Assembly (NCBI GenBank): GCA_963924565.1
Contig: OZ004608.1
Span: 37,324,001 to 37,388,000, forward strand
Direction of reading: 5' to 3'
Origin: Ascidiella aspersa
Taxonomy: Eukaryota
DNA length: 64,000 nt
Of the stretch, positions 27,727-63,550 are shown piece by piece. Made by a program: the position numbers and the translations under genes. The notes beneath the pieces were generated by a model. It made no database searches. It was not told the DNA's origin and saw only the letters and a program-made list of their open reading frames with translations. The stretch's first letter is position 1, and each line of letters starts with the position of its first letter.

Positions 27727-30700
27727 ATGATTGGAATTGTCACGAAGATAGTTTTTGGGTTGATGTTGTTGACCACTGCTGCTTACGGGCGCCCTAAACA
27801 TGGTATGTTGCACTTTAAGTTGATGTAAAGCTGTTATTTAAACTTGTTTTAAAAAAACGTACATTGTTGTTTTTTTTACGATTTTATGAGTATATTTTTT
27901 TAATGTAAATTTTACTTAAAACGGTTATTGTACTGTTATTGAATAATATCCCAACAGTTATTGAATAATATCCCAACAGTACACAATTTTACCACTTAAG
28001 ATTTTTTCGATTAATTATGTTTAGAAGTGACGTTTTTTAATAAATACATTCAAGTTAGGCAAGTCAGCTTGACTTTGATGTTACGTTTGCAAAAATTAGC
28101 TAAACTTTAAAATGTTAAAAAGTCTTACAGAAAATACCCTTACTGCAAACCAATAAAATTTTTGGCCAAAATTAAATATTCTCAAATCCATATGTAGTTT
28201 AAAAAAATAGCTCCACAGAGTGTATCGCAGTAGCATCGTTTTAAAGTTAAAACAAAAGAAAAGTTGATGATTTTTTTTGATATCAGTGTTGCATGTTTTA
28301 TATAGTTTTTTATAAAAAACACAACACAAAATGTATATTGGTAATTTGATAATCATGCTTATTTAGTTTTGTTTAGTTTAATTTCAAATTAAAAATATAC
28401 ATTGATATTCAGATGATATTCAGAGTCTTACCTATTTATAGTTTTCAATTTTATTAAAAAATTATAAAAAATACTGATTTCAGAGTATTACTTATTCCGT
28501 TTTTTTTTCAGGTAAAAAAATCACAAAAGGTAAAAAATTACAAAATTCTTTTCAAAAATAAATTGAAAAAAACACAATATTTTTGTATTTTCAGATTGTA
28601 TTTTGGGAAACACTGAGCCGGCACCGAAGCCTCCTACACCAGAATGTAAGAATGGTGTTTGGACGAATTGGTACGATACCGACGATCCTTCGAACGGCTG
28701 GACATTCCAGGATAACTGCGACATTGAGAAGTTCAGTGTAATCCGGGACCTTCACCCCGAGATATGCGCCAACCCTTCAGCAGTTGATGTTCAGGTTGTG
28801 AATGGACCCCCGCACCAACTGGCTTGGAACATTGACATCTCTGTGAGCGAAGTCAAGTGCTGTCATGGCAGCAACATGATATCATCGACCGCTTGCCTTG
28901 TGTGCCATGACTATGAGGTCCGCTACTGTTGCCCTGCAAGTAAGTAAAACACTCTTTTGTTTGCCAGTAAGTTACTATTGCCCTGCAAGTAAGTAAAACA
29001 CTCTGTTGTCTGCCAGTAAGCTACTATTGCCCTGCAAGTAAGTAAAAAACACTGTTTTCTGCCAGTAAGCTACTAGTGCCCTGCAAGTAAGTAAAATCAA
29101 TATAAAATAGTATCTTATTTGGTCAATTGTATTTAGACCAGTGCTTCCCAACCAGTGAAAGCTATTCCAGGTGGGTCGCGAATCATTTCTAAATGTTACA
29201 GTTTTCTATCTGATTTATATTTTTGCATTATCATTACGTAACATACGTAACTACCTCATGTTTCGCATTAATAGCAAATTACCAGTTTTGTTATTATGTG
29301 AAATTTCACCATCAAAACTGTAATCGTTAGACAACGTTTGTGGCTTTAAGTTAATGTTTAATTTGATGTTTGGGAAAATATAACGTTATTTTAATTTATA
29401 AGCTTAATTATGCTAGACCAATGGTTCTCTACCTTGTTCTTTCGTGGCCCATTTACGTTTATTTTTTTGAAAGAAAAAGCTTTAAAATAGGTTTAGAACA
29501 AAACACAGCAGAACATATTTTAAACAGATTATTTATTCAACCGTGCATTAATTAGTGAAATACTTGCAGCTGAACAATAAATTTGCATTCCTTTATAATT
29601 CCTCCCCAAGCCATTATTCCTGCAAAATTCAATATAATGACACAAATAAAACTAAATCTAGCTTTTTTAAATTGGTCCGTGGCCAACCTCAAATGTTCTT
29701 ACGGCCCAGCAGTCAGCCATGGCCCACTGGTTGAGAAGGGCTGTGCTAGAACTTTCTACGTGGTATTGCCGAAAAGCATGGGCTACATCAAATCAATTCG
29801 GATATTTCAGTTAAGAGTAGTATTAGTATTAAATCCCATGTTGAAAGCAAATAAAGAGTTGTTCGAGACCTTCACAAAATGTTACCTATGATACTTCTGC
29901 ATGGGATTTGATATTTATTCTACGTCCAACTACATCTTCTAGCCATTATCTTAAGATTTATGCGAAACATTCAAATTGCTACCCACATTATGTATGGGCT
30001 GTTATATTTTTTCTACGTCCAACTACAACTTCTAGCCATTATCTTCAGATTTACTCGAAACGTTCAAAATGCTAGATACTTCTGTATGGGATTTGATATT
30101 CATTCTACTTCCAACTACAACCTCCAGCCATTATCTAAAGATTTATTAAAAACCTTCACAAAATGACACCTACTTCTGTATTTGCTTTGATATTTATTCT
30201 ACGTCCAACTACAACTTCCCGCAATTATCTTAAGATTTATGCGAAACATTCAAATTGCTACCCACATTATGTATGGGCTGTTATATTTATTCTACGTCCA
30301 ACTACAACCTCTAGGCATTATATTAGGATTTATTCAAAACGTTCAAAATGCTAGATACTTCTGTATGGGATTTGATATTCATTCTACGTCTAACTACAAC
30401 CTCCAGCCATTATCTTAAGATTTATTCGAAACATTTTAAATGCTACCTATACTCTGTATGGGCTAAATATTCCTACTCACCCTTGTTTCTTCGTTACAGC
30501 CGTCGGTAAATGTGAGGTTGGAACTCAATACTCTTCCGTTAACTGGGGTCCGTGGTGGAACGTTGACACCCCAAACACTAATGGAGACGACCTGGAAGTG
30601 GTTACTAACAATATGCTTGGAGGAAAAATACCAGTTTGCGCTAATCGAATCGCCATCGAGGCGCGTGTGGTATTAACCAACTTGCCTTATGCGTCCGGGG

Positions 30701-30852
30701 GTGATATTCTTACTTTCGTGAGCGCTGCTAATGGTTTAAAGTGTCCCTTGGGGGGAACAGAGTGCAAGGATTACAAGGTCCGCTTCTGCTGCGCCAAGAA
30801 AAGGACAACTGTGGGTGTGAGCCAGCACATGTTTCAACACGAGAGGCAATAA
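27727..30852 (+). CDS. Secreted protein with two WxxW (mucin CysD / CILP-type) domains, about 257 aa. Exons 27727-27802, 28595-28939, 30500-30852
   Basis: Signal peptide MIGIVTKIVFGLMLLTTAAYG. Domain 1 WTNWYDTDDP...C.DYEVRYCC; domain 2 WGPWWNVDTP..NGDDLE...CKDYKVRFCC. Phase-1 introns; spliced length 774 nt, open. Confidence 0.9.
28923..29097 (+). repeat. 49-bp tandem repeat x3.5 spanning the exon 2 donor of the WxxW gene
   Basis: CTACTRTTGCCCTGCAA|GTAAGTAAAA occurs four times. Confidence 0.92.
29419..29743. mobile_element. Charlie-like hAT MITE in intron 2 of the WxxW gene
   Basis: Ends CAATGGTTCTCTACC...GGTTGAGAAGGGCTG. TSD TGCTAGAC/TGCTAGAA. Confidence 0.8.
29860..30470. repeat. About 92-bp minisatellite x6.5 with ABC-ABC higher-order structure
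   Basis: TGTATGGG..TGATATT.ATTCTACGTCCAACTACAAC recurs at about 29897, 29991, 30082, 30177, 30270, 30361, 30454. Confidence 0.9.
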
Positions 30853-30904
30853 TATTTCAAGGAACCTGAAAGAACTGATAACGGAACACGACGCCTTGCT
30901 ATGT

Positions 30905-31056
30905 AGTTAAAATTATATCCTGCTAAAATGAACGCTTGTTAGAATCATATCTTGCTAAAATGAACGCTTATAGAATGATATCCTGCTAAAATTGTGCGCT
31001 TATTAGAATCATATCTTGCTAAATTGAACGCTTATTAAAATTATACCGTGTTAAAA
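30905..31056. repeat. About 32-bp tandem repeat x4-5 in the 3' UTR region of the WxxW gene
   Basis: TTAGAATCATATCTTGCTAAAATGAACGCTT units. Confidence 0.85.
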
Positions 31057-32723
31057 TATAAAGTTAAAATTTCTGCATTTGTTTTTGTTGTCTGCAGCAA
31101 AAAATATAATATTTGTTATATTTCTCGACATGTAAGAGTAATTTTACTCAATATGATTTTGGCGATGCCGCTTGTATTTTAACAACATTCATCATATAAT
31201 ATTCACTTTAAAATACTATCACAATATGTTTGACTTTAAAATGCTTTAAAAGTGTCTCAATATTGATGTTACAAAAATAAAACATTTGCAGAACAAAGTG
31301 TAGTGTGTAATACTTTTATTCTTGTCCAGTGTTTAATGGACTTTGTTTATTATAAATTTTAGTGCATTATTTTCTGATGCGAAATATCTGGTAAATTTTC
31401 AATTTTTTTTAATTTTTTTTTTCATTAAACAGGACAAAACTATAAAGCCTATTTTATTTTAAGGGGTTAAACCGTTGCAGGTATTAAATATATACACTTT
31501 CCAAAATGTTAACAAGTTTATATAAAAAAGGTTTAAAAGAGCAACACTGTTATCTTGGCATAATTTCAGTTATTGCAAATATTGGAAACCTGTTAGCCCG
31601 AAGTTATGTCTATCTGTCACACTCAAAAAGTTGATCCCAAGAAACATATTGGCTGCTAAAAAAATACCGTGAGCCTGCGTCTATATCCATTGTAAACTTT
31701 TGTATCTATACAAAGCACTTACAATTTTAGATATTTTATTTTCTAAAAGCCATCAAAACATTAAACGGACATTTGAACTTTATAAAAGTTTTGCAAATAC
31801 AACGAAATTAATGCATTTTCAAATACAATTGGCGATAAAATAAATGAAAAACCTTTTCGGGCTGGAAAGCAGCTTTAGCGATTATTGTTATTCGTTTTTG
31901 CCTTAATTTAACTTTTCAGCAAATATAATTCAACACTTATGCATTTTAAAAATAACTTTTTGTCGGATATATTAGGGCACTTTAAACTAATATTTTTTTA
32001 AGTCGCCCAGTGAAAGACCAAATTAAAAATTTCTTGCCTGGTTTTCTATTTTTCTTTGTAATTTCTACTTTCTTTAGAATTCATCGGGTTTTTCTTTAGC
32101 AACATAAAAGCCCGTTTTTTTTTCCTATTCAAATCCCAGCAGTTCAATATTAAAATTCCCATTTTAGGTTGCGGATTCAATGAAATTATAAAAATATACA
32201 AAACCTTTTTTTTTCAATTTCAGTCATGTTGCAATATTATAAACCTATTAGAAAAAAATTATGTCAAATCGTCACACCGAAGAATTCCGTTTCCAAAGAA
32301 AATGATTTGCCGCTAAAAAAACACACTAAAAGCTTTCATCTATAAAAGGCTTAGCCTAGTTTTTTTTTGTTTTTTCTTTATTCTACTAACCTTTGTTTTT
32401 TTTTGTTTTTTTTGTTTTTTTATTCTGTCCTATTCAAATCACAGTATTCAAGATTACGGAATCAAAACGCAAATATTGCGAAGTACCAATCTTTTCATCA
32501 AACTAAGATCCAAGAAGCAAAAAATTTCACTCGAACTTTAAAAAGTCCATACATCTTTATAAACGTATGAAATTTATCTTTATTCGTTGTTTGAGAAGGT
32601 AAAAATAAATGAAGAATTATTCGAAACGTTTAAAATGCTACGTACTTCTGTATAGGCTTTAATATTCAACGTCATACTACAACCTCCAATTATTATGCTC
32701 TGAACCTTTACAGTTTCACAAAA

Positions 32724-33803
32724 CTACAAGTAGAACTTGCACACAGTGCTCATGTCCACGTTTCCCCCGCACAGAACCAAACCAACGTGCTTAATATCGT
32801 CTTTTGCGACCTTAGCGAAAGCCTCGCTCATAACAACAGCAACAGCAACCCCAGCCACCGGCTCAATCAACAGCTTAGCTCTCTCCCAAATCAGCTTCGT
32901 AGCTTCTATGATCTCCTCTTCTCCCACCACGAAAGCGTCCTCCACAAACTCCTCCAGGATGGGCCACGTCTTCTCCGATATGGTGCATCCCACTCCTTCA
33001 GCCACCGTGTCCAGATCCCGGTCCACATCAGTCCTCCGCCCATTCCTCTTCGACACGAAGAAGCTGTTCGCTTTCTCCGGCTCCGCTGAGAAGATCCGGA
33101 TGTTGGGATTGAGTTGCTTAGCAGCGATCGCGATCCCACCCATGAGGCTCCCGGTTCCCACCGGGATCACAAGAGCATCTAAGTGAGGATGATCTTTAAG
33201 CATCTCCAGGCCGACAGTTCCGTTCCCGGATATGATTCCAGGGCAGAAAGAAGCAAGGACTCGAACCGCTTCTCGCTCCCTGTGGATCTCATCCACCATC
33301 TTGTCTTGCTCGTCATGCTCGATTCCACCATCCACAATCTCGGCTCCAAAGCTTCTCATCGCATCCAGCTTGCTCTTACTTGCTGCAGGTGGAACCACGA
33401 CAACGCTATTGACTCCGCGAAGCTGACAGACCTTGGCCAAAGCCTGGCCTTGATTTCCACAGCTGCTAGTAACTGCACATTTAAGTCCATCTTCTTTAAT
33501 GAGCTCCAATGCGTTTGTGATTCCTCTGTATTTGAAGCTTCCAGTGCTCTGCAGATTTTCCGCTTTCATGTAGACCTTGAATCCCGAGCGCTGGTTGAGA
33601 GTCGAACACTGAACCGTCGGAGTTCGGACGACAAAAGGCTTGATGCGCCGCCCTGCCGCCACTACGTCATCAAAGTCGATGCAAAAACGCTTCTTGACCT
33701 TAAGTGACCCCGCCTTGAACTCAGAATCGAAACTGAAATATAATGATTTGCATTTTTTAAACTTTTGTTGCTGTCGCTGATTCTTTTTTAAGGAAAACAT
33801 CAA
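32724..33803 (-). CDS. SRR: Serine racemase / serine-threonine dehydratase family PLP enzyme (fold type II). Catalytic domain is in one exon; true start uncertain (acceptor-like TTTCAG at 33733-33738)
   Basis: KAENLQSTGSFKYRG (PLP lysine), SSCGNQGQALA, GNGTVGLE, PVGTGSL, AEP, WERAKLLIEP..GVAVA and LCGGNVD. The WERxKLLIEP stretch resembles animal serine racemases; orthology not proven. Confidence 0.88.
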   Translation of the reverse strand: MMFSLKKNQRQQQKFKKCKSLYFSFDSEFKAGSLKVKKRFCIDFDDVVAAGRRIKPFVVRTPTVQCSTLNQRSGFKVYMKAENLQSTGSFKYRGITNALELIKEDGLKCAVTSSCGNQGQALAKVCQLRGVNSVVVVPPAASKSKLDAMRSFGAEIVDGGIEHDEQDKMVDEIHREREAVRVLASFCPGIISGNGTVGLEMLKDHPHLDALVIPVGTGSLMGGIAIAAKQLNPNIRIFSAEPEKANSFFVSKRNGRRTDVDRDLDTVAEGVGCTISEKTWPILEEFVEDAFVVGEEEIIEATKLIWERAKLLIEPVAGVAVAVVMSEAFAKVAKDDIKHVGLVLCGGNVDMSTVCKFYL

Positions 33804-41700: not shown

Positions 41701-42094
41701 TCCAACTGAAAAAAAAGGCCGGAAATACCACAACAAAGTTAGTGATGGTCTGAGCCAAGCCCTTTATTAAACCTGTCTCCACCAGGGAACAGGTGCCACC
41801 ACGAAGGTAGGGTCCGAGTTGCAAAGGGGAGTAGGGCATTTTTTTCACGATAATTTTCATTTTTGGAAAAGTAGCCAACTTTTTGTGTAATACGCAAATA
41901 TTTTGGTACCGAATAAGAAGTTATCTAAATGTAAAAAAAGACGTTTTTATTATCTCTATACAATAACGACAGTCTACATTTTTTTAAATTAAAGGTTAAA
42001 AACACTAAAAAATGAACAGGCGGTCAGAAACAGCCTCTGTTTTCTTCAAATAGTTCAGACGGTAATGCCAAGTTTCATCATTCTACTTTTTTTC

Positions 42095-44818: not shown

Positions 44819-47800
44819 TTATTGGTTGGCCTCGTCATCATCGTCGTCGTTTCGGTCCCACGTGATCTTGAGGTGCGTCACAATGGCTTGCGTCATGCCT
44901 TCAATGGTGCGTGACCGCTCGTCCAATCCGGCGAGGGCACGCCTGACTGACTTCACGCGCCCGGAGAGAACATCAAGCTGCGATTCCATTTCTTCGAGTT
45001 TCGACTAAAAAAGATGAAGGTTTTGCCAAATTTGAAGAATTTCGACTAAAAAAGATGAATGTTTTGCCTAATTTGAAGAATTTCGGCTGAAAAGATGAAT
45101 ATTTTGCCAAATTAAAAAAAAAATTCGACTAAAAATGTGAGTGTTTTGCCTAATTTAAAGAATTTCGACTGAAAACATGACTGCATCGCCTAATTTACAC
45201 AATTTCGACTGAAAAACATTATAATTTTGCCTAATTTGAGAAATTTCGGCTGAAAAAATGAATATTTTGCCAAATTAAAAAAAATTCGACTAAAAATATG
45301 AGTGTTTTGCCTAATTTAAAGAATTTCGACTGAAAACATGACTGCATCGCCTAATTTACACAATTTCGACTGAAAAACATTATAATTTTGCCTAATTTGA
45401 GAAATTTCGGCTGAAAAGATGAATATTTTGCCAAATTAAAAAAAAATTCGACTAAAAATATGAGTGTTTTGCCTAATTTAAAGAATTTCGTTTAAAAAAG
45501 ATAAATATTTTGCCTAATTTGAAGAACTTCGGCTGAAACGAAAAATAAAAATCGACTGGAAATATAAGTGTTTCGTCTAAGTCAAAAATTTCGACTTAAA
45601 AAGTGGATGTTTCGCCTGATTAAAAAAAAGAAAAAAAAGGAACTTTATCACGAAAAGTGGAGGTGGTATCTTGTTTATTGTTTATAATTGTTACTATAAA
45701 CAATGGATCCTGTGACACTTTGCTGTGTTAATTGATTGTTGTTAACTGTAATTTCCCTTAATTGTATTTTATGTGTCATTTACTTTTATGTCATGCTTGA
45801 CTGATTCTTATGCATGGCTAATTTTATATGCATGAGTGACTTTATATGCATGAGTGATTTTGTACATGTGGCACTGTGCCAGCATGCTTGCCATTTATGT
45901 TAGTGCTGTCCTAATGTCATTTAGTTGGTGCTGTAGTTGTGTTATCAAGTGTTAGCCTTTGTTGTATGTTCCTACTTATATTTCTTTTAGCTCATCATTA
46001 ACTATATGGATTCATTCGAATTAAGGATGCTTCATGTTAATAATAATAAGTTACTTGTTGTTAAATTATATAACTCTGTGCACTTGTGTGCAACAAGATT
46101 CTTCTCCCCATTGGTGGTTGCTTGAAGATAAGTTTACAGAACACTTTAACCCTAACCCTTACCTTCTCTGGGTCCAAAGCCTCGTTAATCGTGTTGTGGT
46201 TGAGGTTCTCCTCGGAGTACAACCACTGGACAAGTCGCGATCTCTTGCGGTGCTTGTTGGGCGAGAAACTTCGGTATTTCTTCATAAATCTTCGGCGAAT
46301 GAACTGGGGGAGCGTGTATTCGACGTCTAATGTCAGCTGGACCTGGGTGTAAGAATGGTTGGCGTTTAAATCTCTATGTGTGTGTGATAGTGCAATGGCT
46401 GTAAACCGAGGGTCTGCCGTTTTTTACGATACTTTGTGATGAAATATGATATTTTTTTTATGAAATATGATATTTTAGATAAAATGTGATACTGTTGTTA
46501 AAATAAAACATGCCATTTTTTTAATGAAACAAAATATTTTTTAAAACAATATGATATTTTTGATGAAATATGATATTTTTCTAAGGAGTGTAAAAAAAAA
46601 TAAAGTAAACAAACCTGCATCCCCAAACTTTCAAGTTCGGCGTTATCCTGGACAGCTTTGATGTCATCAACAGCCAAACCGACCTACATAATGTACATAA
46701 TGTAAACAATGTACACAGTTAAGATATTTAGGTTGCATATACAATTTACAGAGTTAAGCAGGTGGCGTCTTTAGGGCTTTATTATTTCAAGTTGCGTGTA
46801 TTGTGTAAACGAGTAATTATTAACTATATGTATTAAACCGAACAAGGTTATGTTCATAACAATTTATATAGAAAAAATAGTTTAAATTATCAACAGCTAA
46901 ACCGACCTACACAATGTACAGAGTTAAAAGATCTTAAAGGGACTTGAGGTTTATTGGCACAAGTTCCATTAATATTTTTTATTTACTTTTCATATAACAC
47001 GTAGTCATTTCGATAAACTCAATAAGGATAATCTCATAATTATTTGAATAAAAAAGAGCTCCAATAAATAGTAATTTTGTTATAATTTGCTTAGCGGCAA
47101 CTTATACGCAGTGAAACAACATTCCAAAAATATAAAGCTGAATTGTTTTGTTTGAGCCTGCTTCTTTACGGTCAGTAAACACGTATTAGATACAACAAAA
47201 ATACGTACAATGTTGAACTACCAATATGTGTTGACTGTTAAAAAAATCAATTTGACGTATTAACTCACGAGCAAGTTCATGATGATGATGCTCATGAGAA
47301 TCATGAAGATCACGAAAACGATGTACGTCACAGCTCTGTAGTTCACCTGTGAAAGGAAACGGACAGAATTTTTTTTAGAAAAATAAAATAGGCCAAATAA
47401 TGATCAGTTTTTAGCAACAAAAACTTATCAATAATATCCATTCTTTTTTTTTAAACTATTTATTTTCACTCACCAATACCATAAGTTTTTATAAAGATAT
47501 GTCGGAAATTCACTTTTATTGGATATAATAGTTTTGTTACAGAAATAGAATAATAATTAGAAAAAAATAGAATAAAGTCAGATATAGTTAAAAGAAAGAA
47601 ACAGTATACGGCAATGATTCCAAGCCAGGTACCCTTTCAAGCTTATTTACTCCCCAATTTTTAAGACTGACCTGACAAACAACCTTGCATGGAAATAACC
47701 AGGGCTATGTAATCTATTATTCACAACTTACAGCCGACACGAGCAGAGTGTGAGCATCAGCTCCGGTTTCCTGAGCTTCGACCTCAGCGTTGAAAATTCC

Positions 47801-50800: not shown

Positions 50801-53800
50801 ATAATTGTTTTTCTGCTTAATATTACAAGTATCAATGTTAAATATTCAATATTGCAAAATCTGGTTTAGTTACGAATAACAATAATTAGTTGTTCGTTGT
50901 CTTCCATTGTCTTATTGTGATCCTACAGCTTACTAGAAATAATATTCGCCACTTTAAGCTCCCCGCCTTTACCACAGTCTGTTGAGGCTTTGCTTCCGGC
51001 TTAAAGACACAGTGTAGTGTTACGTGGTAAACCGCAGGCGATCAGCTAGTTACACAACTGCTAAAAATGACTTAAAATATTTACAGCACTGGAAGCACCC
51101 AATGGTTTAAAATAACATGGTTGTGCTCAAATCATTTTTACTAAATTACTTAACGACTTAAGACTTGAATATTTTGACAAAATTACATTTTCATTTTATT
51201 ATTATTAACTTTTTTGTTGCAAATGACTTGTATCCTTCTTGAGTATTGTTGCAAAATGGCTCCACAGCTTTGTCTTAAGTATCTTAGCAAATTACTTGTA
51301 CTCAAGGTATCTTGTCTTGATGACTACCACCTACTTTTTGAGAAAGGTGAGGGTTTGTGATTAAATTGTTTTTGCATTGAACTTGCAAACCTAGTTTTTG
51401 CAGATTTACTTTTAGACTTATTTAAGTTTTTATTGCTAATTGACGGCCAAACATTTAAACATACATATCAATGAATTTTATGGTTAACAATAGTAAACAC
51501 ACTTACTAATAAAGAAAGGCGACCAAAGTTGTAGCATATCTGCTTACAAGCCTAACATTTACGTATTTGTTGCTTTTTTGACGGATAAACACCTAAGCAT
51601 ATTTTAGTGTGGCAACAGTAATACACTCACTGATAGAGAAGGGCGGTGGTTGTGTAAGCATGTATGAGTTGAAGAAGCCGAGGAAAGCGACATACACGAG
51701 CAGGTTGAGGTAGTAGACAGCACGACCGTACGATCTCCACTTATGGTTTAACAAGCTGATCACAAGCGGATGACGTAACAACTTGCCACGTCTCCAGTCC
51801 ACCTGAGAAGAAGTGACGTCATCGTTACCTCACGGTCAATGAACATACGTTGCATGCAGGGATGAAAGTGAAATAATTTTCTTACTTTTTACGAATTTTC
51901 ACATAAGTCATAAAGTGTCTAAAACAAGCAAACTTTGGAAACCTGAAGTTATCGATCAATGTGTAACTAAATCTTAGTTGATTAACTTTCGATAAGTTGC
52001 ATGCAGCACGGAAGTAAGGTTTGTAAACGTATGCCATCCTTGCAAAAACTACGATCATGTGTAAAATAATTTAACTTTTTTTACGCAGCGTTTCTTCGAC
52101 AAAATAGCATCGTGGGTTTCAAGATAACAACAACAATGGATCCGACCTACCATGACCATGAGTGGGTGGTTCTTTTTTACCAACGAAGTATCATCTGTGT
52201 ATGGAACGGCATCTTTCACGATCCTGCCGTTTTCATCATAAACCTATCACGAGGATCATAAGATAGGTTCAATGAGATAAAATATGCTGCTTATACAAGA
52301 TGGAGTTTAGAAGCATTTCCAACAGTTTAAGACAAACATGAAACAAAATTGGACTTCTTATCTTGTGATTGTACTAAATTCGACTTTTTTTTGAGTAAAA
52401 AAGGTTCACTACTGTTGTTGACATATTCGAAAATGATGCACAACTTAGGTTAACCATGATTTACACGGCGATACAATAAAAATATAAAGTTTAATAAAGT
52501 TTAAGAAAAAAATAGATCTTTAAGGTAGTAAAGGTATCCACCATAAATGTACAATACAGTAGCAAACACAGTTTTTGTTTACAAATTATATAAAGCTTCG
52601 CCCGTTGCAGCTGAAAAAACTGACTTGTTGTAGCATATAACGTATCTTAAACGTCGATTAATAGCGCTCGCAGGTAAGTTATTACGAATTGTTAGATATC
52701 TAGTTATAACAGGTCGCAAGTAAATTAAGAAAAGCAGCATATGTTACAAAAACAGTGGCTATCATTAAGTTAAATAAACGCGAGTTATACAGATGTTGTA
52801 AGTTTAAAGGTCAGAATTTATTTTCATGGTATTTCGGGTTATTGAAATTTAAAAAAGATACCCAAAGGCTTTCGTATATTAGTTAGCCAAAACAACGAAC
52901 AAATTTTTGAGAATTTTTTTCACTTTTGTCATAAAAGCAACAAGGCATATATACCATGCTGATATTTGCATTGTTACAATACAAATTATAATTAAACAAA
53001 ATAAAAATAAAACAAATAAAAAATACAAAACGGATCCATAACAAAAGACAAAAGCTGAACAAAATAACAACATAGAACAGGACAGTCATGCTAAAACAAT
53101 AATTAACTGGTATGCTTTCAGGCATCATGCCACCGTAAGAAAATGTAGCTTAATTTACCGGGATGTCCAGCGGGTCGTCCAATGATTCTTGACGCTTGGA
53201 AATGGTAGCGATATTATAAGATTGGGAAAGTATAAAAAGAACCCGAAACTAACATCCAGATTCGAAATATATTTATATTTTTTAAGGGAAAATAAAATTG
53301 TTAAGTCTCTAGTCACAATACAGTTCGACCTAAGGTCTAATATATTTTATATAGCATCAAAAGGCTTTTTGTAGTTTATTAGGAGCTGTAGTGCAGGAAA
53401 GGCAAGGCTTGAAAAAGCTATACTGCTGTGGTGAGATTCGAACTCACGACCTCGGACATAACGCTACCAACTGGACCACAGAGGCCAAGTAGTGAAATAT
53501 GTTAATATGTGTGACGTTGTAGGTTCATGAGACTACATACGAAATGTAAACAGTTGTACAAAGTTGTGTAAAAATGTGCGTATGTTTTATAGAAAGAAGA
53601 AAAAATGTCACTAAACAGAAATTTCTAACAACTTTACAACATTTATATTTTGCATACCGTGATGATTTAAATTTTCACATCAAGATATCGCATTTGAAAA
53701 GGAAAAATATAAGTAGATTTGCTTGAAAATCAGAGATCCTTTTATTTCAAAGTGAGGAAAGGTAATAAAATGTGCAGTAAAGGTAATCGTAACGGTTTGA

Positions 53801-56800
53801 AGTTGGAGTGAAGTGTTAAGAAAAACCACATGCCATAGAGCAGTAGCCAACTTTTAAAAAACTTTAAAACAAAACTTTAATCAAGCACGATTCACTAAAA
53901 AAAGGTAATCTATAAAGAATTATATAAAATAAACTAAATGTAACGTTGAAAAAACACACAGCACAGATAAATCTTAGTTTATCTTTTAAAACAGTGTGTT
54001 TCAACCTGAAGGATTTGGTCAACTTTCTTTTTTTTTACTAACATCATTTACTTTTTACTAATTAGTAGTAATTTGCATTCACTATTATTGTATTTCAACT
54101 TACAGCGTAAGGAACGTCGTGGATATTGAGGTTAACTTCTGAGGAAGAGTCATCAGCTTCAAGCCAGTTCGTACTCGAAAACTCGTCGTCGATAAACTCG
54201 TAATCGAAGGAGATCTGGAAATACGAGATGTTGTGGCGCTGTTGGTTTCACTACGCAACATGATATCATTAACTTTTTCAAGCCACATTTATTAACTCAA
54301 AAAGAAACAAACGTCGTCAAATTTGTCGTTCTATGTGCGGTTAGATGTTGAACTGGAAAATACTTCATTTTTTAATTTTCGAAAATCAACTTGACATAAA
54401 AAAAACGAACCAAACAGACAGGACTGGAATGTAAAATATTTAATGGTCTTAGTGTTGTTATTGCAAAGCCTTTATATTTTGAAACACCGTAATAACCCAT
54501 CCGCCATATTTATAGTTTTTAGTAAGAAATTATGTATTTTTAAAGTTTAGTTTTACCCAAATTTAAATACAAATACCAGTGTCATTTACGTATTTCTACA
54601 AATTAACCTTATTACGTATAATATCAATTTAATGATTACAATAGTACAACTTTAAAGTATGGTCAACAATAGTACCTGTAGTATTTTATTGTGTATAGTC
54701 TAGCATTTCCACCTAACAGTTCTATAACAAAGTAATTATACCTGAAATGATCTATGATCCTTGTTCTTGTTATTTCCCTTCAGGCATTTTGTGAAGACTT
54801 CCTCCGCAACTTCCGGCATCTTCTGGATCATTTTGCGGATAGGGGTGTTAGTTCGGTTGCCTGCAAAAGCAAGCGTAGCATTAAAACGCAAATAACATCG
54901 TTTACTTTATTTCGCTTTGTTTTGTCTTAAAGTCACCTTTCACTTTATTCGTTTCTGTTGCTTTTTCAATTTTTCGTTTTCACTTATCAGCATTAATTGT
55001 TTTATGCCTTGTTTTTATGCTGAAGGAGAATTCTTTTGTTTCAGCAACCATTTGGAACGCAAGAATTTGGGTAACAGCATTACTTACAGCAGGTTTCCAA
55101 CAAAGCATTTTAAAGAGATTCAAATATAAATGTTAACAACTATCAATTTATTAACAAAATACCAAACCAAATAACAAGCACCGCAAACCAACAACATATC
55201 GATCAAAATAACCAACAACTATGTTCAATCCCAAGTTAATGTATTTCTGTCGAACAAAATAGCAACAATCGATTACCATATCTAGCAACCACTTGGTCAA
55301 TTAAAAATAATCAACTAACCAACAATAAATCACCATCAATTACCCAAATAATAAAAATCAATCAAATTAAAACGGATGAATAAATTAAACAACAAATTAC
55401 CAACAAACCAACAACAACAACAATATACAACCAACCAAAAAAACAAATTACCAACCAGCCAACTAACCACTAACAACCATACAAATACAACAATAAACAA
55501 CCAACCTAAAGACCTAAATTAAACCAACCAATCAAAAGATCTAAATCCAACCAATCAACCACTAACAACAATTAAACAAACAACCAACCAACCAAATAAT
55601 AAATTACCAACCAACCTGAAACGATGTCGATGGTCCTGTTCTTCAGCGCATCTCTCCACTTATCAGATCTTATGATCTCCAAGGCGCACGAAGCGTGACC
55701 AGAATCAACGGCAAAGTCCAGAGCGTTCCTCCCATCAACTGAACGATTCGTTACATCAGCGTTCCACCTAAAGCAATCAAGAAACATTGGGAGCACTAGC
55801 CTTTGTACTAATACTTGTTAGCTTTCAGTTGCAGTTGCTTGCATTGCTAATATATTTACTATTCTTATACATATATTACAATATATTATACTTGTTTTAC
55901 ATAACATTGTTGTTTTAGATTTATTCGTAGCACATTTTACGTACGTATAACAGATAAAGACTTGTTTGTTTATGATTAAATTGGATTAACATATAGCATT
56001 AGTAAGGGTATCACACCAGAGCAGTAGCTCATTGTTCTTACTGGAGGAGTCGTTCCACCATGTCCTTGTGTCCCTGTTGACAAGCAAGATGAAGCGGAGT
56101 AATCTTCCTCTTATCTTTGGGATCAACAGGTGAGTCAGCTTCCAGAAGAACGACTGCTGATTTGTGCATTCCGGCGTAAGCGCAGCAATCAAGGGGCGTC
56201 CATTGCTTCGCGTTTCTACACCGAGTCAAAAAGTATTAAGTTTGTTTAGTTTAAGGTATGTCAAAAAAGGTTAGGTTTCATTTGAGCAAGTGTTTTTTTA
56301 AAATAGGAAAATATGTAGCATTTCATCTGACGTTTTTTAGTGATGATGATGCATATATTGAAAGGTTTTTAATATTTTAAGTACTAGTTTAAAGCGATTT
56401 TAACACAAACGGTTTATGTGGCCCCATCACAGATAAAAAGCATTGAATATGTTTAAGATATGCAAAATTCAACCAATCTATTCAAGGTTAGGTTTGATTT
56501 AAGCACGCGTTTTTACGATAGAGTGATTTTCATCTGTCGTTAATTGGTGATGAATATGATGCATATATTGAACAGTCTTTGATATTTTAACAACTAATTT
56601 AAAGCTTTGGTTTTTAAAAAAATGGTTTATAATGGTCTCATGTGTGTAAATATACGCAAATAATTGTATAAGTTTTAGTTGCTGCAATATTTTATGCATT
56701 TATCATAGCCCTCTGCGTCCTATCGGTTTACTGCGATCAATAACACGAACAGGCACACAAAAAGTAGTTCTAAAACAATATTTTTTTGTAAATTAATCAA

Positions 56801-59800
56801 GATAGAAAGCGTTAGATGTGTCCTATGCGGGTTACACCACCTTTTTCTAAACCGCTGTTTTAAATCTCCCTTTTCTGAACACATATTTTTCGATCCTTCT
56901 CTTCATAAAAAGCTAAAGTACCTTCTTTGCATCAGCTGAACTTATTTCTGGCACTTTTAAACAATAAAATAACGTTCTGCATATTGGGCTTAACGTATAT
57001 AAAAAGGTAGTTCGACTTTTTGTACTATACATTCTAGTACCTGTTACTGAGCTTACACGTTGCTACGATCTGATAAGACTGATGCTTGCTAAATCTTTCC
57101 ATACTTTTCGACTTTCGAGCACTGCCGAGCTGCAAAAACATATTCACAGCATTTAAATACTTATAAAGCAATACCTAATATCTTAGGCAAACAACTTAAG
57201 TCATTGTTAAACGTGCAACTACAACTGTGCTATATGTAAAGTATCCGTCTTAATCTTACTGCTCGGCGTAACAGGAGGCTTATTTAGCTATACAATAGCT
57301 ACAGTCTTATCAAATATTAAAAAATATATCCTTTTCACAATATTTATTATGCCAGTCCTTTTTACGAAAAAACCTAAACCTAAGATGTCCAATAAGCTAA
57401 ATTTTATCCAGAAATACCAAAATTAATTTAACTAATCAGTAAACTAAGTTAAATAACCCCATATTTCGGGGGAAGCACCCACCTGGCCCCAATATTAACT
57501 CTGATATTACGAGAACATTAGTTTTACAAAATCACAACCTTACTTAGCTGCTCAACGTGCATTTTTTTTTCTAGAAAACACCAAAATAATCAATAACTAT
57601 TCTAGTTAACCCAAACTTTAAACTAAATTAGCCAAAAAAAATAAAAGTTTAACTCCATATGTTTGGAGAAGCACCTACCTGGCCCCGATGTTAGCCCCTA
57701 GTCTGACCAGCTCCCTGACCACGTGGGTCCTCCCACAAAGTGCGGCAAGATGAAGTGGAGTGTTGGCGTTCTCATCATCATCATGTACGATCTCGTGTTT
57801 CCTAGCAACAAGCGCTTGTACAATCTTCAACCTCCCGTTGTCGGCCGCAAGATGAAGAGGAGTTTGCTCATCTTCGTTCTTAGAATCGATCTCCGCTCCA
57901 GCGTCCAACAGGATCTGAGATGTTAAAGGGGAGGGTGACACTTGGTCGCTAGCTTTGTAGTGTTTTGCGAGTGTTTGTTTAGGGAGGACACCGTATTTTA
58001 AGAGCTTTTCTCAGAACTACTACAAAGATGGGTAAAGATGCAAATTTTACTTTTTCGTTTTTAAATCAGCTTTTAAATGCTACACGGAAAACGAAAAAAA
58101 ATTAAAAGCTAAGAAAATATTCAGAAAACCCCGACTGAGCGTTGATTTCTAAAAGCTTGTTATACATAGTTGATTGGTCATTTCTCAAACTCTTTGAATA
58201 CATGGCGGAAACATTAAGTGCAAGCAGCCATTCCCACTCGTGCTGGTTGGACATTGTTGGCAAATATATTTTGTTTTATGTTTAGGTTTGGAACGCCGAA
58301 GATAAAACTTGTAGTGAGCTTAACTGACACATACCAATAAACACCAAATCGTATTTAAATATTCTATTATTGCTGTAGTAATACACTTATAGTTCAAAAT
58401 AACATTGTTGAAATTTTTTGGTTGAAACCAACATTTTCTTTAATTTAAGCAAATAAGAATAAACAATACTTTAAGTGTTTTTCCACGAAACTTTCAACCG
58501 ACTCACTTTTACGACGTTGAAGTGTCCCTTCTCCGCAGCGACATGTAGCGGCGTGTTGTCGTAACGATCGGTCAGTTCCAATAACCCGTTTCTCACTTTC
58601 TTGCTCTTTAGTAGGAGCTGAGAAGAAAACAACACATTAGGAGCGACATATCGCAGGTGGGGTAAATATAAAAGAGGAAGTACCGCACGACAATTATAAT
58701 AATATCGGTTATAAGCTTAGTACGTGTTTTCACAACAGAATATTTCCCTTCAACAAACCACATCATGCCGACGACAAAAGTTTTAAAATTTTATAATAGC
58801 TTGAGAAGCTCACCGCGTCGAACAACAATCAGTCAGCAAGGTCTAAAGCTTTTAATGTATAAAATGAATTTTTGTAGAAGCAAATAAATAGTAAAAAAAT
58901 TAAAATAATAAAATGTAAAATAAATAAATAAATAAATAAAAATACATCCAAGACTAACATGGACACAGACAACTTTTCGGTTATGAATTACTTATTTAGG
59001 TTGAATGCTTGAGTAAGGTATTATATATGCTTTCAAAACAAGGTGTAGCTAAAAGTTGAATTTGATTATATTTATGCAGGGCAACGCTTCTAGTACCTAA
59101 TACGAACAACCTGCACATCTCCTAAATTATCTTCAGTTAAATTACAAGCAAAATGGCCTTGGGTGAGGTTTGAACCCAGAACATATTCCGAGACCGTCGC
59201 TCTACACACTGAGCTACACAGGCTCAGAGGGGAGACAGTCGAGAAACAACCATAGCACCGTTGCCTGCTGCATACTGTTTGTAAAACTAGGCTGTGGTGA
59301 GGTTAGAACTTACGACCTCGGCCATACCGGGAACGTCGCTCTACCAACCGAGCTACACAGGATCAGAGGGAGTGAGTTGAAAAACAATCATAGCACCGCT
59401 GCCTGCTGCATCCTGTTCGTAAAACTAGCCTGTGGTGAGGTTCGAACTCACAACCACCGGTTTACCAAAGTTTTATATGTAAACAACGAAAGATTAAAAT
59501 GCAGACTGCGCTGGGATTCGAATCCGTGACCATATTTCGGCCAACGAACCTGTAGAGCGTCAGGTCTGTCTTCCTCAGCGCACTGATACAACACCGTCTT
59601 GTCGTTCTTGTCAGTTGCTGTGACGTTTGCTTTGTGCTTAAGGAGGATCTCTATCGCCTCCGTGTGGCCGTAGTTGGCGGCGATCAACAGCGCCGTAAAG
59701 TGGTCGGCGTCGTGAAGCTCAATCTTTGCTCCGCTGTGAGAAAACATAAGATGTAAGACAACATTTATCAACCATAAAAACATGTTGAGGTGGACCACAG

Positions 59801-62789
59801 ACAAAAAAAATAGATTTATTGAAGAATTTAGTTTCAGTTGTGTCTCTATACTTAATTTTTAGGAATAATTCCTTAGGGAGAAATTGAGAAGGAATGTAAA
59901 TAAAAATGAAATGTAAATTTATTGTTCAGCCCCAAGTATCTCACTAATGCACGGTTGAATAAATATTCTGTTTTGAAATATGTTCGGCTGTTTTTGTTGT
60001 ATACCTATCATAAAGTTTTTTTTGTTCTTTCATAAAGTTTGTTGAACCGCATGACTTTTTCGCAACGATCATGGGCAACAAAAGAAAAAAGTTAGAACCA
60101 CTGATTTAAGATAGGGGGGTACTTAAGCGGATAAGCTCATATTGAAATGTGGCATGTGTGTAAAGTATGGTAGGGTTAACAAGTTTAAAATATAATTTCG
60201 ATGTCAATTAAGGATATTAAGCTCGATATGAGTGTTAGGTTGGTAAATGTTATCCAGGGGTGGCCAACCACTCAGATACCAAGAGCGGCATTAGTTACTT
60301 GGTTAACCGCTAAGAGCCACACCTTACACACATGGAACGAAAATAATAGCCTATCACTCAATTTCTTACTCATAACAACAAAGCCATCGCAAAAAGCGCG
60401 AAAGAGAGCCTTTGTTTCGTTAAAAAGACAAAATTGGAACTTAGCCTACAAGGAGATACGACGCATTAAATGAGAAAATACACATTTCTCGATATAATGT
60501 GATTTATCAATATTATTTGGGCATATTGTTTGCGTTTAACTTGTTTCAAAAGTGTTTGGCAGGCAAAAAGTCTGAGTCGAAACCATCAATAATCCATAAC
60601 TTAACCTAACGAAATCGAGTCACTCTAATCTAATATCATATGTGCAACACGAAGGAGCCGCATATAACTCGGTGAAGAGCCGCATGCGGCTCGCGAGCCA
60701 CGTGTTGGCAACCCATGTTATATACCGTTAAAAAGTTTCTTAAAGTTAAAGGAGGCGTTTACAGCCTAATCTATTTAGAACTAAAAAGCATTGGCCCTAA
60801 CGGCTCGAACTATTCTGAACTTAAATTTTATCTCCAACTCGGCAATGGTGTTGCTCAGGATAGCCATTTGTCATATACATCATAAACACCAAACTTATGA
60901 GTTGGAAAAAATGCAAAAACATATAAATCACAAAAACACAAAAAACACCACAAACGCTATAAATATACGGAAGGAAAGTTATCTGTTTGTTTAGTAGATC
61001 TAATATCGCCAATATGTATAAAAATACAATGCTACCAATAACTACAAGAGTTTAATCAGGAGCACTAATACGTTATCTGTTGTAAAAATTGACAAGAAAC
61101 TAAAGATCATAAAAAATTATCAGCAGTTAAAAATAGACTGTGCAAAAATAAAAATAAAATCAGCCAACACGAACAATACAAAATCACGAGCTTTGCGAGA
61201 AGAATCTAAACGTATTTTTATCTTTTCTTCCTTTATAATAATTAGGTCAATTGAGGCAAAGCAAAAAAAATAAATAAAACTTATAATGTAAGTGCTAGTA
61301 AAACAAATAGCAAAAAAATCTCGAACCTCGTGAGTAGAAACTCGACCACCTTGAAGTGGTTGAATTGTGACGCAAGAATGAGCGGGGTTGACAACGATTC
61401 GTCCCGCTCGTTGACCTTTGCCCCCTTGGCCACTAGGAGGCGGGCGATCTCAAGGTGACCGTGACGGGCGGCCAGGTGAAGGGGGGTTTCGCGGTTCGAT
61501 CGGAAAGAATTGAGGGCGGCCGGGTAATCTGGAAATTTTCATGTTTTTTTTAATTTCTGTGTTTAGGTTTGAATTTTTATCACTTTTCGCCATTTTTTTT
61601 GGATCAAAATCTGTTTTCTTTGCGTGAATATCTGTTTAAAAAAAAATTGAGCTTTCAGATTACACAAAAAATAAAATATTTTATTAGTTTTATGAAAACT
61701 AAACAGCTCAATTAAATGACAAAACATTAAGAAAAAACAGATTTAAAAAAAATACTAAAAAAAGTAAAAAATGCATCGTAAAATCGGTGAAAAGTTGTTT
61801 AGCATTATCCGGCGTTAGATACTTTAACAAAACCTTATACTTTTCGTTAACCAATTATTTCTTAAAAAGTTATTAAAACTCACTATTTGCGAGGCAGGCT
61901 TCGACGATGTGCTCGGTGACCTTGAGATGACCGTTGTCGACCGCCAGGTGCAAGGGGGAATTCCCATCGTTGTCCTTCTCATCAAGGATATCCAGGAACC
62001 GAACGTTGTGTCGCTTCTTGTAGTTGTCAAGCATAAGCTTCACGATCTGAGCACAAAGAATATGTGTTGTTTATATGAAAATCTGGAAAAAATCAATACA
62101 CAGTCTGAAAAAAAATAATGAAAAATCGGAAAAAAAATCTTAACTGTAAAAAAAAATGATTAAAATTTTATTTAAAATCCAAAAAAATAAATAGATTAAA
62201 ATAAAAAACTTATTCAAACCGTGAAAAATAAATGGATTTCAACTTTTAAATAAAAATTAAATTTCAAATCTGAAAAAAAATTAAAATGTAAAAAAAAAAC
62301 TGTGAAACAAAAAGGATTTGAACTCTACATAAAATTTAATTTAAAATCTGAAAAAAAAAAATTGCATTTCAACTGAGGAACTTTCTATTAATTACACTAA
62401 AGTTTAACGATCTGTGGGTACACAAATAATGTATGTTGATTAAAAGGAAAAGTGGTAAAAACATTGGTTGTGCGAAAAATTATCATATTGCTGTTTTCTA
62501 GAGACTGAAACCAGTTAGAACCTTAAGGCACACAAAGGACTACTTTAAACCTACTCCAGACCGTTAAAAAAGCTCCTCCAACAAGCAAACATTTACTTGA
62601 TTGGATTAATTTATAATTATCGCTACTCACTTCTAAGTTTCCTTCTGCTGCTGCAAACTGAAGAGGCGTCCCATTGTCGTCATCCTGGCATCTGATCTCG
62701 GCTCCTTGCTCAATCAAGATCTTCGCAACATCAACTCTTCCATAGACCGCTGCTATGTGCAGGGGGGTCATCTGTTGTCTGTCACGAGC
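44819..62789 (-). CDS. TRPA1: TRPA1-like ankyrin-repeat TRP channel, 5'-partial (about 1013 aa in window). Exons 62789-62631, 62046-61884, 61528-61327, 59733-59550, 58617-58507, 57914-57679, 56215-56042, 55767-55616, 54860-54742, 54214-54104, 53194-53159, 52243-52151, 51802-51631, 50345-50206, 49780-49646, 48919-48719, 47872-47732, 47346-47269, 46683-46615, 46342-46163, 45004-44819
   Basis: More than 10 TPLH-type ankyrin repeats, LLRHPLV..LL..KW, six TM segments, pore MMIGEFEF, S6 IMNLLVGLAVDDI and a C-terminal coiled-coil-like helix. All junctions are GT-AG and phase-compatible (3042 nt). The 36-nt exon is the least certain. Confidence 0.93.
45001..45620 (-). repeat. About 40-bp tandem repeat x16 (161-bp higher-order unit) beginning at the acceptor of the last TRPA1 exon
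   Basis: TTTCGACTAAAA/TTTCGGCTGAAA at 45001, 45042, 45083, 45125, 45165, 45205, 45246, 45286, 45326, 45366, 45407, 45448... Confidence 0.92.
47923..47994. repeat. Perfect 72-bp inverted repeat (35-bp arms, 2-nt loop)
   Basis: AATTAGTATTTTTTTAGAAAGCGATTCCCGATATT-AA-AATATCGGGAATCGCTTTCTAAAAAAATACTAATT. Confidence 0.95.
53427..53483 (-). repeat. Truncated tRNA-derived repeat
   Basis: CTGTGGTGAGATTCGAACTCACGACCTCGG matches the units at 59.3 kb. Confidence 0.65.
59160..59455 (-). repeat. Tandem tRNA-derived repeat, 138-bp unit x about 2.2, in a TRPA1 intron
   Basis: Minus strand TAGCTCGGTTGGTAGAGCG (A box) ... GTTCTAACC/GTTCGAACC (B box). Units start at 59292 and 59430; no convincing anticodon stem. 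Confidence 0.8.
60255..60717. mobile_element. Charlie-like hAT MITE in a TRPA1 intron
   Basis: CAGGGGTGGCCAAC...GTTGGCAACCCATG with GAGCCGCATGCGGCTC subterminal motif; TSD degraded. Confidence 0.7.
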
Positions 62790-63550
62790 CTACAGAGATG
62801 TGAAATAGTAGTGATTATGTGGGGGTCATCTGCTGCCTGTCACGAGCCTAAAGAGATGTGAAATAGTAGTGATTAAATTGGGGTCATCTGCTGCCTGTCA
62901 CGAGCCTAAAGAGATGTGAAATAGTAGTGATTAAATGGGGGTCATCTGCTGCCTGTCACGAGCCTAAAGAGATGTGAAATAGTAGTGATTAAATGGGGAT
63001 CATCTGTTGCCTGCCACGAGCCTAAAGAGATGTGAAAAGTAGTGATTAAATGGGGGTCATCTGCTGCCTGTCACGAGCCTAAAGAGATGTGAAATAGTAG
63101 TGATTAAATGGGGGTCATCTGTTGTCTGTCACGAGCCTACAGAGATGTGTAATAGTAGTGATTAAATGGGGGTCATCTGTTGTCTGTCACGAGCCTACAG
63201 AGATGAGAAATTGTAGTGTTTAAATGGGGGCCATCTGTTGTCTGTCACGAGCCTACAGAGATGTGAAATAGTAGTGATTAAATGGGGGTCATCTGTTGTC
63301 TGTCACGAGCCTACAGAGATGTGAAATAGTAGTGATTAAATGGGGGTCATCTGTTGTCTGTCACGAGCCTACAGAGATGTGAAATAGTAGTGATTAAATG
63401 GGGGTCATCTGTTGTCTGTCACGAGCCTACAGAGATGTGAAATAGTAGTGATTAAATGGGGGTCATCTGTTGTCTGTCACGAGCCTACGGGGATGTCAAA
63501 TTGTATCGATTAAATGGGGTCATCTGCTGTCTGTGACGAGCCTAGAGGGA
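62763..63550 (-). repeat. 58-bp minisatellite x14 (degenerate copies continue to about 63850) spanning a TRPA1 splice acceptor
   Basis: TCATCTG repeats at 62768, 62826, 62884, 62942, 63000, 63057, 63115, 63173, 63231, 63289, 63347, 63405, 63463, 63520. Confidence 0.95.

What the first reader, a model, noticed from the sequence alone, without database searches (positions are those of the whole stretch)
28923..63550. Recurrent splice-site-anchored repeats: arrays of decoy or poison splice sites in two unrelated genes
Seen: at least five independent repeats begin inside an exon and extend into the adjacent intron, so each unit carries a real splice junction (58-bp x14 at 62.8 kb, about 40-bp x16 at 45.0 kb, 49-bp x4 at 28.9 kb, single duplications at 46.9 kb and 57.5 kb). 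The units share no sequence with each other, so this is not one mobile family. In each case the exon-proximal junction restores the normal protein. Inference: this is either a mutational process that nucleates at exon boundaries (a possible route to intron growth and new micro-exons) or a copy-number-tunable way to adjust splicing and expression. Junctions are a small fraction of intron length, so five hits looks enriched, but I could not test this statistically.
Basis: partly seen in the sequence, partly recalled or inferred. Interest (0 to 1): 0.85.

Follow-up and report, generated by a model that had tools for sequence, protein, structure and literature searches.

The report
Splice sites copied inside intron repeats
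In two sea-squirt genes, several short intron repeats each began by copying a real exon-intron junction; this is a known kind of minisatellite that lengthens introns and fills them with spare splice sites, and their number here is close to what random placement predicts.

Summary
Each carries a real splice junction whose position is fixed by protein homology. The three arrays are private to this locus.

- The genes are an ascidian TRPA1-like channel (minus strand, 44.8 kb to beyond the window) and a CysD/mucin-like gene (plus strand).
- Every extra site would give a premature stop or a junk tail if used, so "decoy/poison" is a fair description of the sequence.
- The claimed enrichment does not hold up. 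This gene has a junction about every 500 nt, so a 40-58-nt unit has roughly a 5% chance of straddling one.
- Placement tests: this gene 3 observed against 1.28 expected (P=0.11), or 4 against 1.39 with a looser rule (P=0.034, post hoc). Five paralogs: 0 against 2.39. All six genes: 4 against 3.78 (P=0.55).

Boundary-spanning minisatellites are a described class (human F7, IFI6, CBS, LMNB2, PDGF; PMC1557585). In those genes the exon-contiguous site is the one used; in IFI6 and CBS the two nearest extra sites are used as well. The multi-copy acceptor-side arrays are the less documented variant.

No RNA or read evidence could be obtained, so use of the extra sites remains untested. First readers flagged similar repeats in other windows of this genome (unchecked notes).

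The parts
62763..63557 (-). 58-bp x13.7 minisatellite. Each unit is about 31 nt of intron 3' end, an AG acceptor, and the first 27 nt of ankyrin exon E4. There are two unit subtypes.
   Evidence: private to this locus
63558..63759 (-). 4-5 decayed older copies of the same unit (38-57 nt each) on the intron side of the array
62625..62789 (-). TRPA1-like exon E4 (ankyrin repeat). Its acceptor at 62790|62789 is the last, exon-contiguous copy of the array.
   Evidence: profile position 189->190; Phallusia alignment SIE|ARD; Pfam Ank
44997..45538 (-). 40-bp x13.3 minisatellite with a 161-bp higher-order repeat. Each unit is about 31 nt of intron ending in a pyrimidine run plus AG, then 9 nt of the terminal exon. 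Decayed copies continue to about 45620.
   Evidence: private to this locus
44822..45004 (-). Terminal TRPA1-like exon E22 (C-terminal coiled coil, ends at the stop codon). Its acceptor is at 45005|45004.
   Evidence: weak TRPM_tetra match
28922..29096 (+). 49-bp x3.6 repeat. The unit is two half-units, each with a GTAAG donor. The first copy holds the last ~18 nt of the CysD exon and the true donor at 28940|28941.
   Evidence: private to this locus
28567..28940 (+). CysD (Mucin2_WxxW) exon whose 3' end is the founder of the 49-bp repeat. The start coordinate is where the open frame begins, not a mapped acceptor.
   Evidence: Pfam PF13330, E=1.4e-11; phase match with the exon starting at 30499
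46889..46928 (-). Single upstream copy of the E20 acceptor (23 nt intron + AG + 18 nt exon), 223 nt from the true site at 46684|46683
57446..57497 (-). Single downstream copy of the E9 donor (16 nt exon + GT + about 33 nt intron), 196 nt from the true site at 57678|57677

Best explanation
These are ordinary minisatellites and local duplications. They arose by replication slippage or unequal exchange in a repeat-rich region near a chromosome end. In each case the founding unit happened to straddle a splice junction of a compact, exon-dense gene.

The copy that stays joined to the exon is intact, so the normal mRNA can still be made. The other copies sit in the intron as spare (pseudo) splice sites that are mostly ignored. 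The main lasting effect is a longer intron.

Shown here: the anatomy, the exactness of the junctions, the private origin of each unit, the stop codons behind every extra site, the intron growth, and the lack of excess over random placement.

Inferred, not shown: the slippage origin, and that the splicing machinery prefers the exon-contiguous sites.
For: - Junctions are exact by homology.
- The exon parts of the units code residues conserved in Phallusia (ARDKQEMTP, TKLEE, VGL.VDD), so the exon was the source and the repeat the copy.
- The units are private to this locus and unrelated to each other, so there were three or more independent births and no mobile element is involved.
- Unit subtypes, a higher-order repeat and decayed distal copies are the usual marks of unequal exchange.
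- Placement tests: 3 observed against 1.28 expected (P=0.11) in this gene; 4 against 3.78 (P=0.55) over six TRPA genes.
- The window has 2-4 times more arrays per kb than the paralog loci (30 in 74 kb, against 4-12 in 40-60 kb). It lies 2.4 Mb from the end of a 39.8-Mb contig.
- The old 40-bp array (units 76% alike) sits beside a terminal exon that is still 74% identical in protein to Phallusia. The gene has therefore stayed functional with the array in place.
- Precedent on the donor side: in human F7, LMNB2 and PDGF only the exon-contiguous donor is used; in IFI6 and CBS the two nearest extra donors are used as well (PMC1557585).
- Precedent on the acceptor side: in CBS 844ins68 the exon-contiguous acceptor is chosen (PMC1802585).
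Against: - No RNA data: use of the extra sites is unknown.
- For acceptor arrays the productive site is the last of 14. Simple first-come or intron-definition rules would favour the upstream copies, so some unproductive splicing is plausible.
- Within this one gene, 4 junction-spanning repeats against 1.39 expected gives P=0.034 once the looser detection rule is allowed.
- The two largest arrays in any of the six genes are both junction-anchored.
- All five decayed 58-bp copies still show an AG at the matching place. This was judged by eye and not tested.
- First readers noted similar cases in other windows.
Confidence: 0.65

Rival explanations
1. The arrays act as a dial. Extra acceptors or donors divert part of the pre-mRNA into transcripts with early stops (removed by nonsense-mediated decay) or into a channel without its C-terminal coiled coil. 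Copy number then sets the output of productive TRPA1 or mucin mRNA.
For: - Every extra site is followed by a stop within 0-28 codons or by a junk tail.
- The extra sites are nearly identical to the true ones, including the pyrimidine tract and a possible branch site.
- In human IFI6 and CBS the two nearest extra donors are used (PMC1557585).
- AG is kept in 15 of about 16 units of the old 40-bp array.
Against: - None of the five paralogs has such an array, so it is not a conserved feature of the family.
- AG retention is not beyond neutral expectation (about 12 of 16 expected; my arithmetic), and the units are not independent.
- In F7, LMNB2 and PDGF the extra sites are silent (PMC1557585).
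- No RNA structure and no known RNA family in the units.
- No expression data were available.
Confidence: 0.12
2. A mutational bias seeds tandem duplication preferentially at exon-intron junctions in this genome, for example through transcription- or splicing-linked DNA damage. Junction-anchored repeats would then be commoner than random placement predicts.
For: - 4 observed against 1.39 expected in this gene under the looser rule (P=0.034).
- The two largest arrays are both anchored.
- A 93-bp array stops 34 nt short of another acceptor, and a 19-bp array starts 16 nt after a donor.
- First readers flagged similar cases elsewhere in the genome (unchecked).
Against: - Five paralogs: 0 observed against 2.39 expected. 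Six genes: 4 against 3.78.
- Under the uniform rule, this gene gives P=0.11.
- The P=0.034 is post hoc and needs a repeat that the uniform rule missed.
- With about one junction-spanning repeat expected per gene-dense window, repeated sightings are expected anyway.
- I know of no mechanism that would do this.
Confidence: 0.12
3. The arrays are assembly artefacts: reads of a shorter repeat were collapsed or expanded.
For: None found. It could not be tested because no reads were available.
Against: - The arrays are under 1.1 kb and have ordered internal variants (two subtypes in blocks; a 4-unit higher-order repeat; decayed ends).
- The assembly is highly contiguous, 75 contigs for 308.6 Mb, which suggests long reads that would span such arrays.
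Confidence: 0.03

Closest known systems
Human F7 intron 7 minisatellite (37 bp, 5-9 copies), and the class listed with it: IFI6/6-16, CBS IVS13, LMNB2, PDGF (PMC1557585)
   Same: It is a tandem array whose first monomer spans the exon-intron boundary, so the true donor is followed by identical pseudo-donors. The 49-bp array at 28.9 kb and the donor duplicate at 57.5 kb have exactly this layout.
   Different: - Different organism (an ascidian) and different genes.
- Only 3.6 copies in the donor-side array.
- Site usage and copy-number polymorphism were not measured here.
- The two large arrays here are the mirror image: acceptor side, with the true site last rather than first.
CBS 844ins68 (Romano et al. 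2002, as cited in PMC1802585)
   Same: It duplicates the 3' splice site at an intron/exon junction and leaves two identical acceptors, of which the distal, exon-contiguous one is chosen. The 46.9-kb duplicate has this layout, and the 58-bp and 40-bp arrays are multi-copy versions of it.
   Different: - One extra copy in CBS, against 13-14 here.
- In CBS, G runs between the sites favour the distal one; no such runs are evident in these units.
- A search of the held library found no multi-copy acceptor-side array.
Intron creation or sliding by tandem duplication (PMC3265369; PMC2891723)
   Same: Tandem duplication of a segment that carries splice signals, tolerated because one pair of sites restores the reading frame.
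   Different: Here no new intron is made. An existing intron is lengthened, and the intron positions are shared with paralogs.

Membership tests
Boundary-spanning minisatellite (F7 IVS7 type) | Tandem array of units of roughly 10-100 bp inside a gene | tested here: met
   58 bp x13.7, 40 bp x13.3, 49 bp x3.6
Boundary-spanning minisatellite (F7 IVS7 type) | The terminal monomer spans a true exon-intron boundary, so the splice site is repeated in the intron | tested here: met
   Junctions fixed by profile continuity and the Phallusia ortholog; units laid out
Boundary-spanning minisatellite (F7 IVS7 type) | The extra sites match the true site in sequence | tested here: met
   Acceptor copies are identical or nearly so from -31 to +27; donor copies read CAA|GTAAGT, CCA|GTAAGT or CCA|GTAAGC
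Boundary-spanning minisatellite (F7 IVS7 type) | The exon-contiguous site is the one used in mRNA | not testable with these tools
Boundary-spanning minisatellite (F7 IVS7 type) | Copy number varies between individuals (VNTR) | not testable with these tools
   No reads available
Regulated unproductive splicing (poison sites) | The alternative site brings in a premature stop | tested here: met
   Stops within 0-28 codons, or a junk C-terminus
Regulated unproductive splicing (poison sites) | The alternative site is used, and its transcripts rise when decay is blocked | not testable with these tools
   No RNA data
Regulated unproductive splicing (poison sites) | The poison element is conserved in related genes or species | tested here: not met
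   None of the five paralogs has a junction-anchored minisatellite. Orthologous introns of other ascidians could not be fetched.
Mobile or dispersed repeat family (introner or transposon-borne satellite) | Copies of the unit elsewhere in the genome | tested here: not met
   Each array matches only its own locus in G000
Intronic RNA gene array (snoRNA or miRNA cluster) | Match to a known RNA family, or a fold better than shuffled sequence | tested here: not met
   No Rfam match in the window; z-scores -0.5 to +1.6
TRPA1-type channel gene (the host gene) | N-terminal ankyrin repeats, a six-helix ion-transport domain and a C-terminal coiled coil, co-linear with known TRPA1 proteins | tested here: met
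   22 co-linear exon hits to a TRPA1 profile; 64-88% identity per well-aligned exon to the Phallusia TRPA1 homolog; Ank domains

The most novel reading that the evidence does not exclude
In this ascidian, multi-copy acceptor arrays (13-14 self-contained 3' splice sites ahead of the true one) are used at a level set by copy number, and so tune how much full-length TRPA1 channel is made. Alternatively, tandem repeats are seeded at junctions more often than chance genome-wide. Neither is excluded: no RNA data and no genome-wide annotation were available.
Probability: 0.1. Interest if true: 0.7.

Novelty: new member of a known kind. Interest (0 to 1): 0.3.

Why it matters
The result explains a pattern that first readers flagged repeatedly in this genome. 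Where exons are dense (a junction about every 500 nt) and minisatellites are common, a unit of 40-60 nt has about a 5% chance of straddling a junction. Roughly one such repeat per gene-dense window is therefore expected without any special mechanism.

The finding does show directly how minisatellite growth lengthens introns three- to ten-fold.

The two acceptor-side arrays are a natural test case for how a 3' splice site is picked among 14 near-identical copies. Far less has been published on this than on the donor-side case (F7).

Tried and rejected
- Transcript fragments: a search for same-species fragments starting in exon E3 found only one genomic ORF from a relative (P0265, 68% identity).
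A genome-wide test was therefore impossible.
- Annotation-free proxy: a test for an open, GC-rich flank next to an array edge was dropped, because 12-24% of random positions passed it.
- Own annotated protein: the search with P0005 listed relatives only, none from the window's own genome.
- Rejected identities: dispersed or mobile family; RNA genes; structured RNA.
- The 93-bp array at 29892-30464 was considered as a sixth anchored case and rejected. It ends 34 nt before the acceptor, and any similarity beyond that point is unconvincing.
- A 10-mer shared by the 58-bp and 49-bp units occurs in only one 49-bp copy and is probably chance.
All searches were exon by exon, by reference.
Full report
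**What the window is.** The window is G000:C2:37324001-37388000, 2.4 Mb from the end of a 39.8-Mb contig in a 308.6-Mb genome. GC is about 35%. The closest protein to its largest gene is the TRPA1 homolog of the ascidian Phallusia mammillata (P0209), followed by Styela clava. The organism is therefore a sea squirt.

The stretch in question holds two genes:
- A CysD/mucin-like gene on the plus strand, with Mucin2_WxxW exons at 28.6-28.94 kb and 30.5-30.82 kb.
- A TRPA1-like channel gene on the minus strand, running from its stop codon just below 44822 to beyond the window end.

A profile built from 20 full-length TRPA1 homologs gives 22 co-linear exon hits from 68.1 kb down to 44.8 kb. The spliced protein was never joined or searched; all work was exon by exon, by reference.

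Tandem Repeats Finder finds the three arrays at the stated places. On the gene strand they look like this:
- 58-bp array: 14 full copies plus about five decayed ones reaching 63759. Each full copy has about 31 nt of intron, an AG, and 27 nt that code ARDRQQMTP.
- 40-bp array: units of about 31 nt of intron ending in a pyrimidine run and AG, plus 9 nt of the terminal exon. They are organised in a 161-bp higher-order repeat.
- 49-bp array: two half-units per unit, each with a GTAAG donor, giving seven donor motifs in 150 nt.

The two single duplicates are also real:
- The acceptor copy at 46.9 kb is 88% identical over 41 columns.
- The donor copy at 57.5 kb is about 79% identical over 52 columns. 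Its alignment score is 49, against a maximum of 31 in 300 shuffles.

**The junctions are real.** Profile positions run on without a gap at each claimed junction: 189 to 190 at 62789, 1032 at 46683, 1118 at 45001, and an exon end at 57678. The Phallusia protein aligns across each of them:

| Junction | Phallusia | This window |
|---|---|---|
| 62789 (acceptor) | SIE, then ARDKQEMTPLH | SIE, then ARDRQQMTPLH |
| 46683 (acceptor) | NLLV, then GLPVDD | NLL, then VGLAVDD |
| 45004 (acceptor) | PEK, then TKLEEMET | PEK, then SKLEEMES |
| 57678 (donor) | exon ends IGAR | exon ends IGAR |

Donor and acceptor phases agree. The exon parts of the units are therefore ancestral coding sequence. The repeats copied the junction; the exon was not recruited from a repeat.

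For the CysD exon, three things fix the donor at 28940|28941:
- The Pfam domain ends four residues before the open frame ends.
- The first GT after the domain is a perfect GTAAGT.
- The phase matches the acceptor at 30498|30499.

**What the units are not.**
- Each array matches only its own locus in the whole genome, so none is a mobile or dispersed family.
- The units are unrelated to each other. One 10-mer is shared by the 58-bp unit and a single 49-bp copy, which is about what chance allows.
- No Rfam family matches anywhere in the window.
- No unit folds better than shuffled sequence.

**What the extra sites would do.**

| Extra site | Outcome if used |
|---|---|
| Any upstream copy of the 58-bp acceptor | ARDRQQMTPI, then a stop |
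| 46.9-kb acceptor copy | Stop after 28 codons |
| Donor copies at 57.5 kb and 28.9 kb | Stop within 0-3 codons |
| 40-bp acceptor copies | The 60-residue coiled-coil tail is replaced by 13-31 unrelated residues |

"Decoy or poison" is thus a fair description of the sequence. Whether the sites are used is a separate question.

The TRPA gene has about 40 junctions in 19.5 kb, one per 500 nt. A unit of 40-58 nt then has about a 5% chance of straddling a junction.

I mapped exons in the five paralogs of this gene with the same profile. I detected repeats in all six genes by one rule, then re-placed each repeat at random within its gene.

| Set | Class | Observed | Expected | P |
|---|---|---|---|---|
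| Six genes | Arrays | 2 | 1.42 | 0.42 |
| This gene | Arrays + local duplicates, uniform rule | 3 | 1.28 | 0.11 |
| This gene | Looser rule that catches the 57.5-kb pair | 4 | 1.39 | 0.034 |
| Five paralogs | Arrays + local duplicates | 0 | 2.39 | |
| Six genes | Arrays + local duplicates | 4 | 3.78 | 0.55 |

Rows caused by a 4-bp microsatellite in one paralog were set aside. The P=0.034 is post hoc and depends on the looser rule.

The exon map of the mucin-like gene is too incomplete for the same test. A modest local excess cannot be excluded, but nothing here requires one.

**Why this gene.** The window holds 30 arrays with a period of 12 or more in 74 kb. The paralog loci hold 4-12 in 40-60 kb each. 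Repeat birth is therefore two to four times more frequent here, and the window lies near a contig end. From general knowledge, minisatellites tend to cluster towards chromosome ends. I did not test this for ascidians.

**What the arrays have done.**
- The intron between E3 and E4 is 1329 nt, of which about 970 nt is array. The homologous intron in the paralogs is 125-590 nt.
- The last intron is 1158 nt, of which about 616 nt is array.

Intron growth is therefore shown directly.

The 40-bp units are only 76% alike, so that array is old. The terminal exon beside it is still 74% identical in protein to Phallusia. The gene has lived with the array without losing function.

**What is known.** Minisatellites whose first monomer spans an exon-intron boundary are a described class (PMC1557585):

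| Human gene | Array | Site use |
|---|---|---|
| F7 | 37 bp, 5-9 copies | Only the most upstream donor |
| LMNB2 | 100 bp, 10-15 copies | Only the true donor |
| PDGF | 81 bp, 16-18 copies | Only the true donor |
| IFI6/6-16 | 25 pseudo-sites | True donor plus the two nearest pseudo-sites |
| CBS IVS13 | 15-20 repeats | True donor plus two pseudo-sites |

On the acceptor side, CBS 844ins68 duplicates a 3' splice site, and the distal, exon-contiguous copy is chosen (Romano et al. 2002, as cited in PMC1802585). A search of the held library found no multi-copy acceptor-side array. That mirror-image form is the less documented part of this finding.

**Verdict.** The most likely reading (about 0.65) is independent, ordinary tandem duplications whose founder unit happened to include a junction. 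They are tolerated because the exon-contiguous site still works, and they lengthen the intron.

The rivals are:
- a splicing dial (about 0.12),
- a junction-linked mutational bias (about 0.12),
- an assembly artefact (about 0.03).

For the acceptor arrays, some leakage into unproductive transcripts is plausible, because the productive site is the last of 14 near-identical ones. Only RNA data can settle this.

**What could not be done.**

First readers flagged similar junction-seeded repeats in other windows of this genome. Those notes are unchecked. With about one such repeat expected per gene-dense window, they are not evidence of excess.

Noticed in passing
window 29892-30464 and 30907-31057: The second CysD exon (about 30499-30816) is bracketed by two more arrays. 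A 93-bp x6.2 array ends 34 nt before its acceptor, and a 32-bp x4.7 array starts about 90 nt after its likely donor. Neither demonstrably includes the junction.
   Followed up: partly
window 54169-54208: A 15-bp x2.8 repeat (in frame, 5 codons per unit) lies inside coding exon E13 of the TRPA1-like gene, in a Ser/Thr-rich stretch.
   Followed up: no
window 46439-46584: A 19-bp x7 array starts only 16 nt after the donor of exon E20. It is close to a junction but does not span it.
   Followed up: no
window 59188-59455, 53425-53463; possibly 26206-26367: A 138-bp x1.9 GC-rich repeat in a TRPA intron has a related 39-nt copy 5.9 kb away (87% identity). A similar translated motif appears at 26.2-26.4 kb. 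It may be a small dispersed element.
   Followed up: no
L026-L027 (G000:C4:30707272-30717307): A 10-kb satellite of 177-bp units (TRF score 16726) lies about 4 kb upstream of the first mapped exon of a TRPA paralog.
   Followed up: no
G000:C6:12489959 and 12509567; C4:14724870; C4:30692993; C2:18173839: Five TRPA1-like paralogs, two of them in tandem 19.6 kb apart on C6. The C2 copy has an in-frame TAA in its pore exon and an irregular exon order, so it may be a pseudogene.
   Followed up: partly
L015 (G000:C6:12494914-12495233): A 320-bp microsatellite of 4-bp units abuts or overlaps the edge of a TRPA paralog exon hit by about 31 nt. The profile hit may run into it.
   Followed up: no
window 29003-29012 and 62772-63476: The 10-mer CTGTTGTCTG is shared by one 49-bp copy and the type-A 58-bp units: 9 matches in the window against 0.09 expected. 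These come from only two independent loci, so it is probably chance.
   Followed up: yes
window 63458-63759: The decayed copies of the 58-bp unit keep the intronic motif TAATC(A/G)CTA(C/T)TATTT better than the exon-derived part, and each still shows an AG at the matching place. This was judged by eye and not tested for constraint.
   Followed up: no
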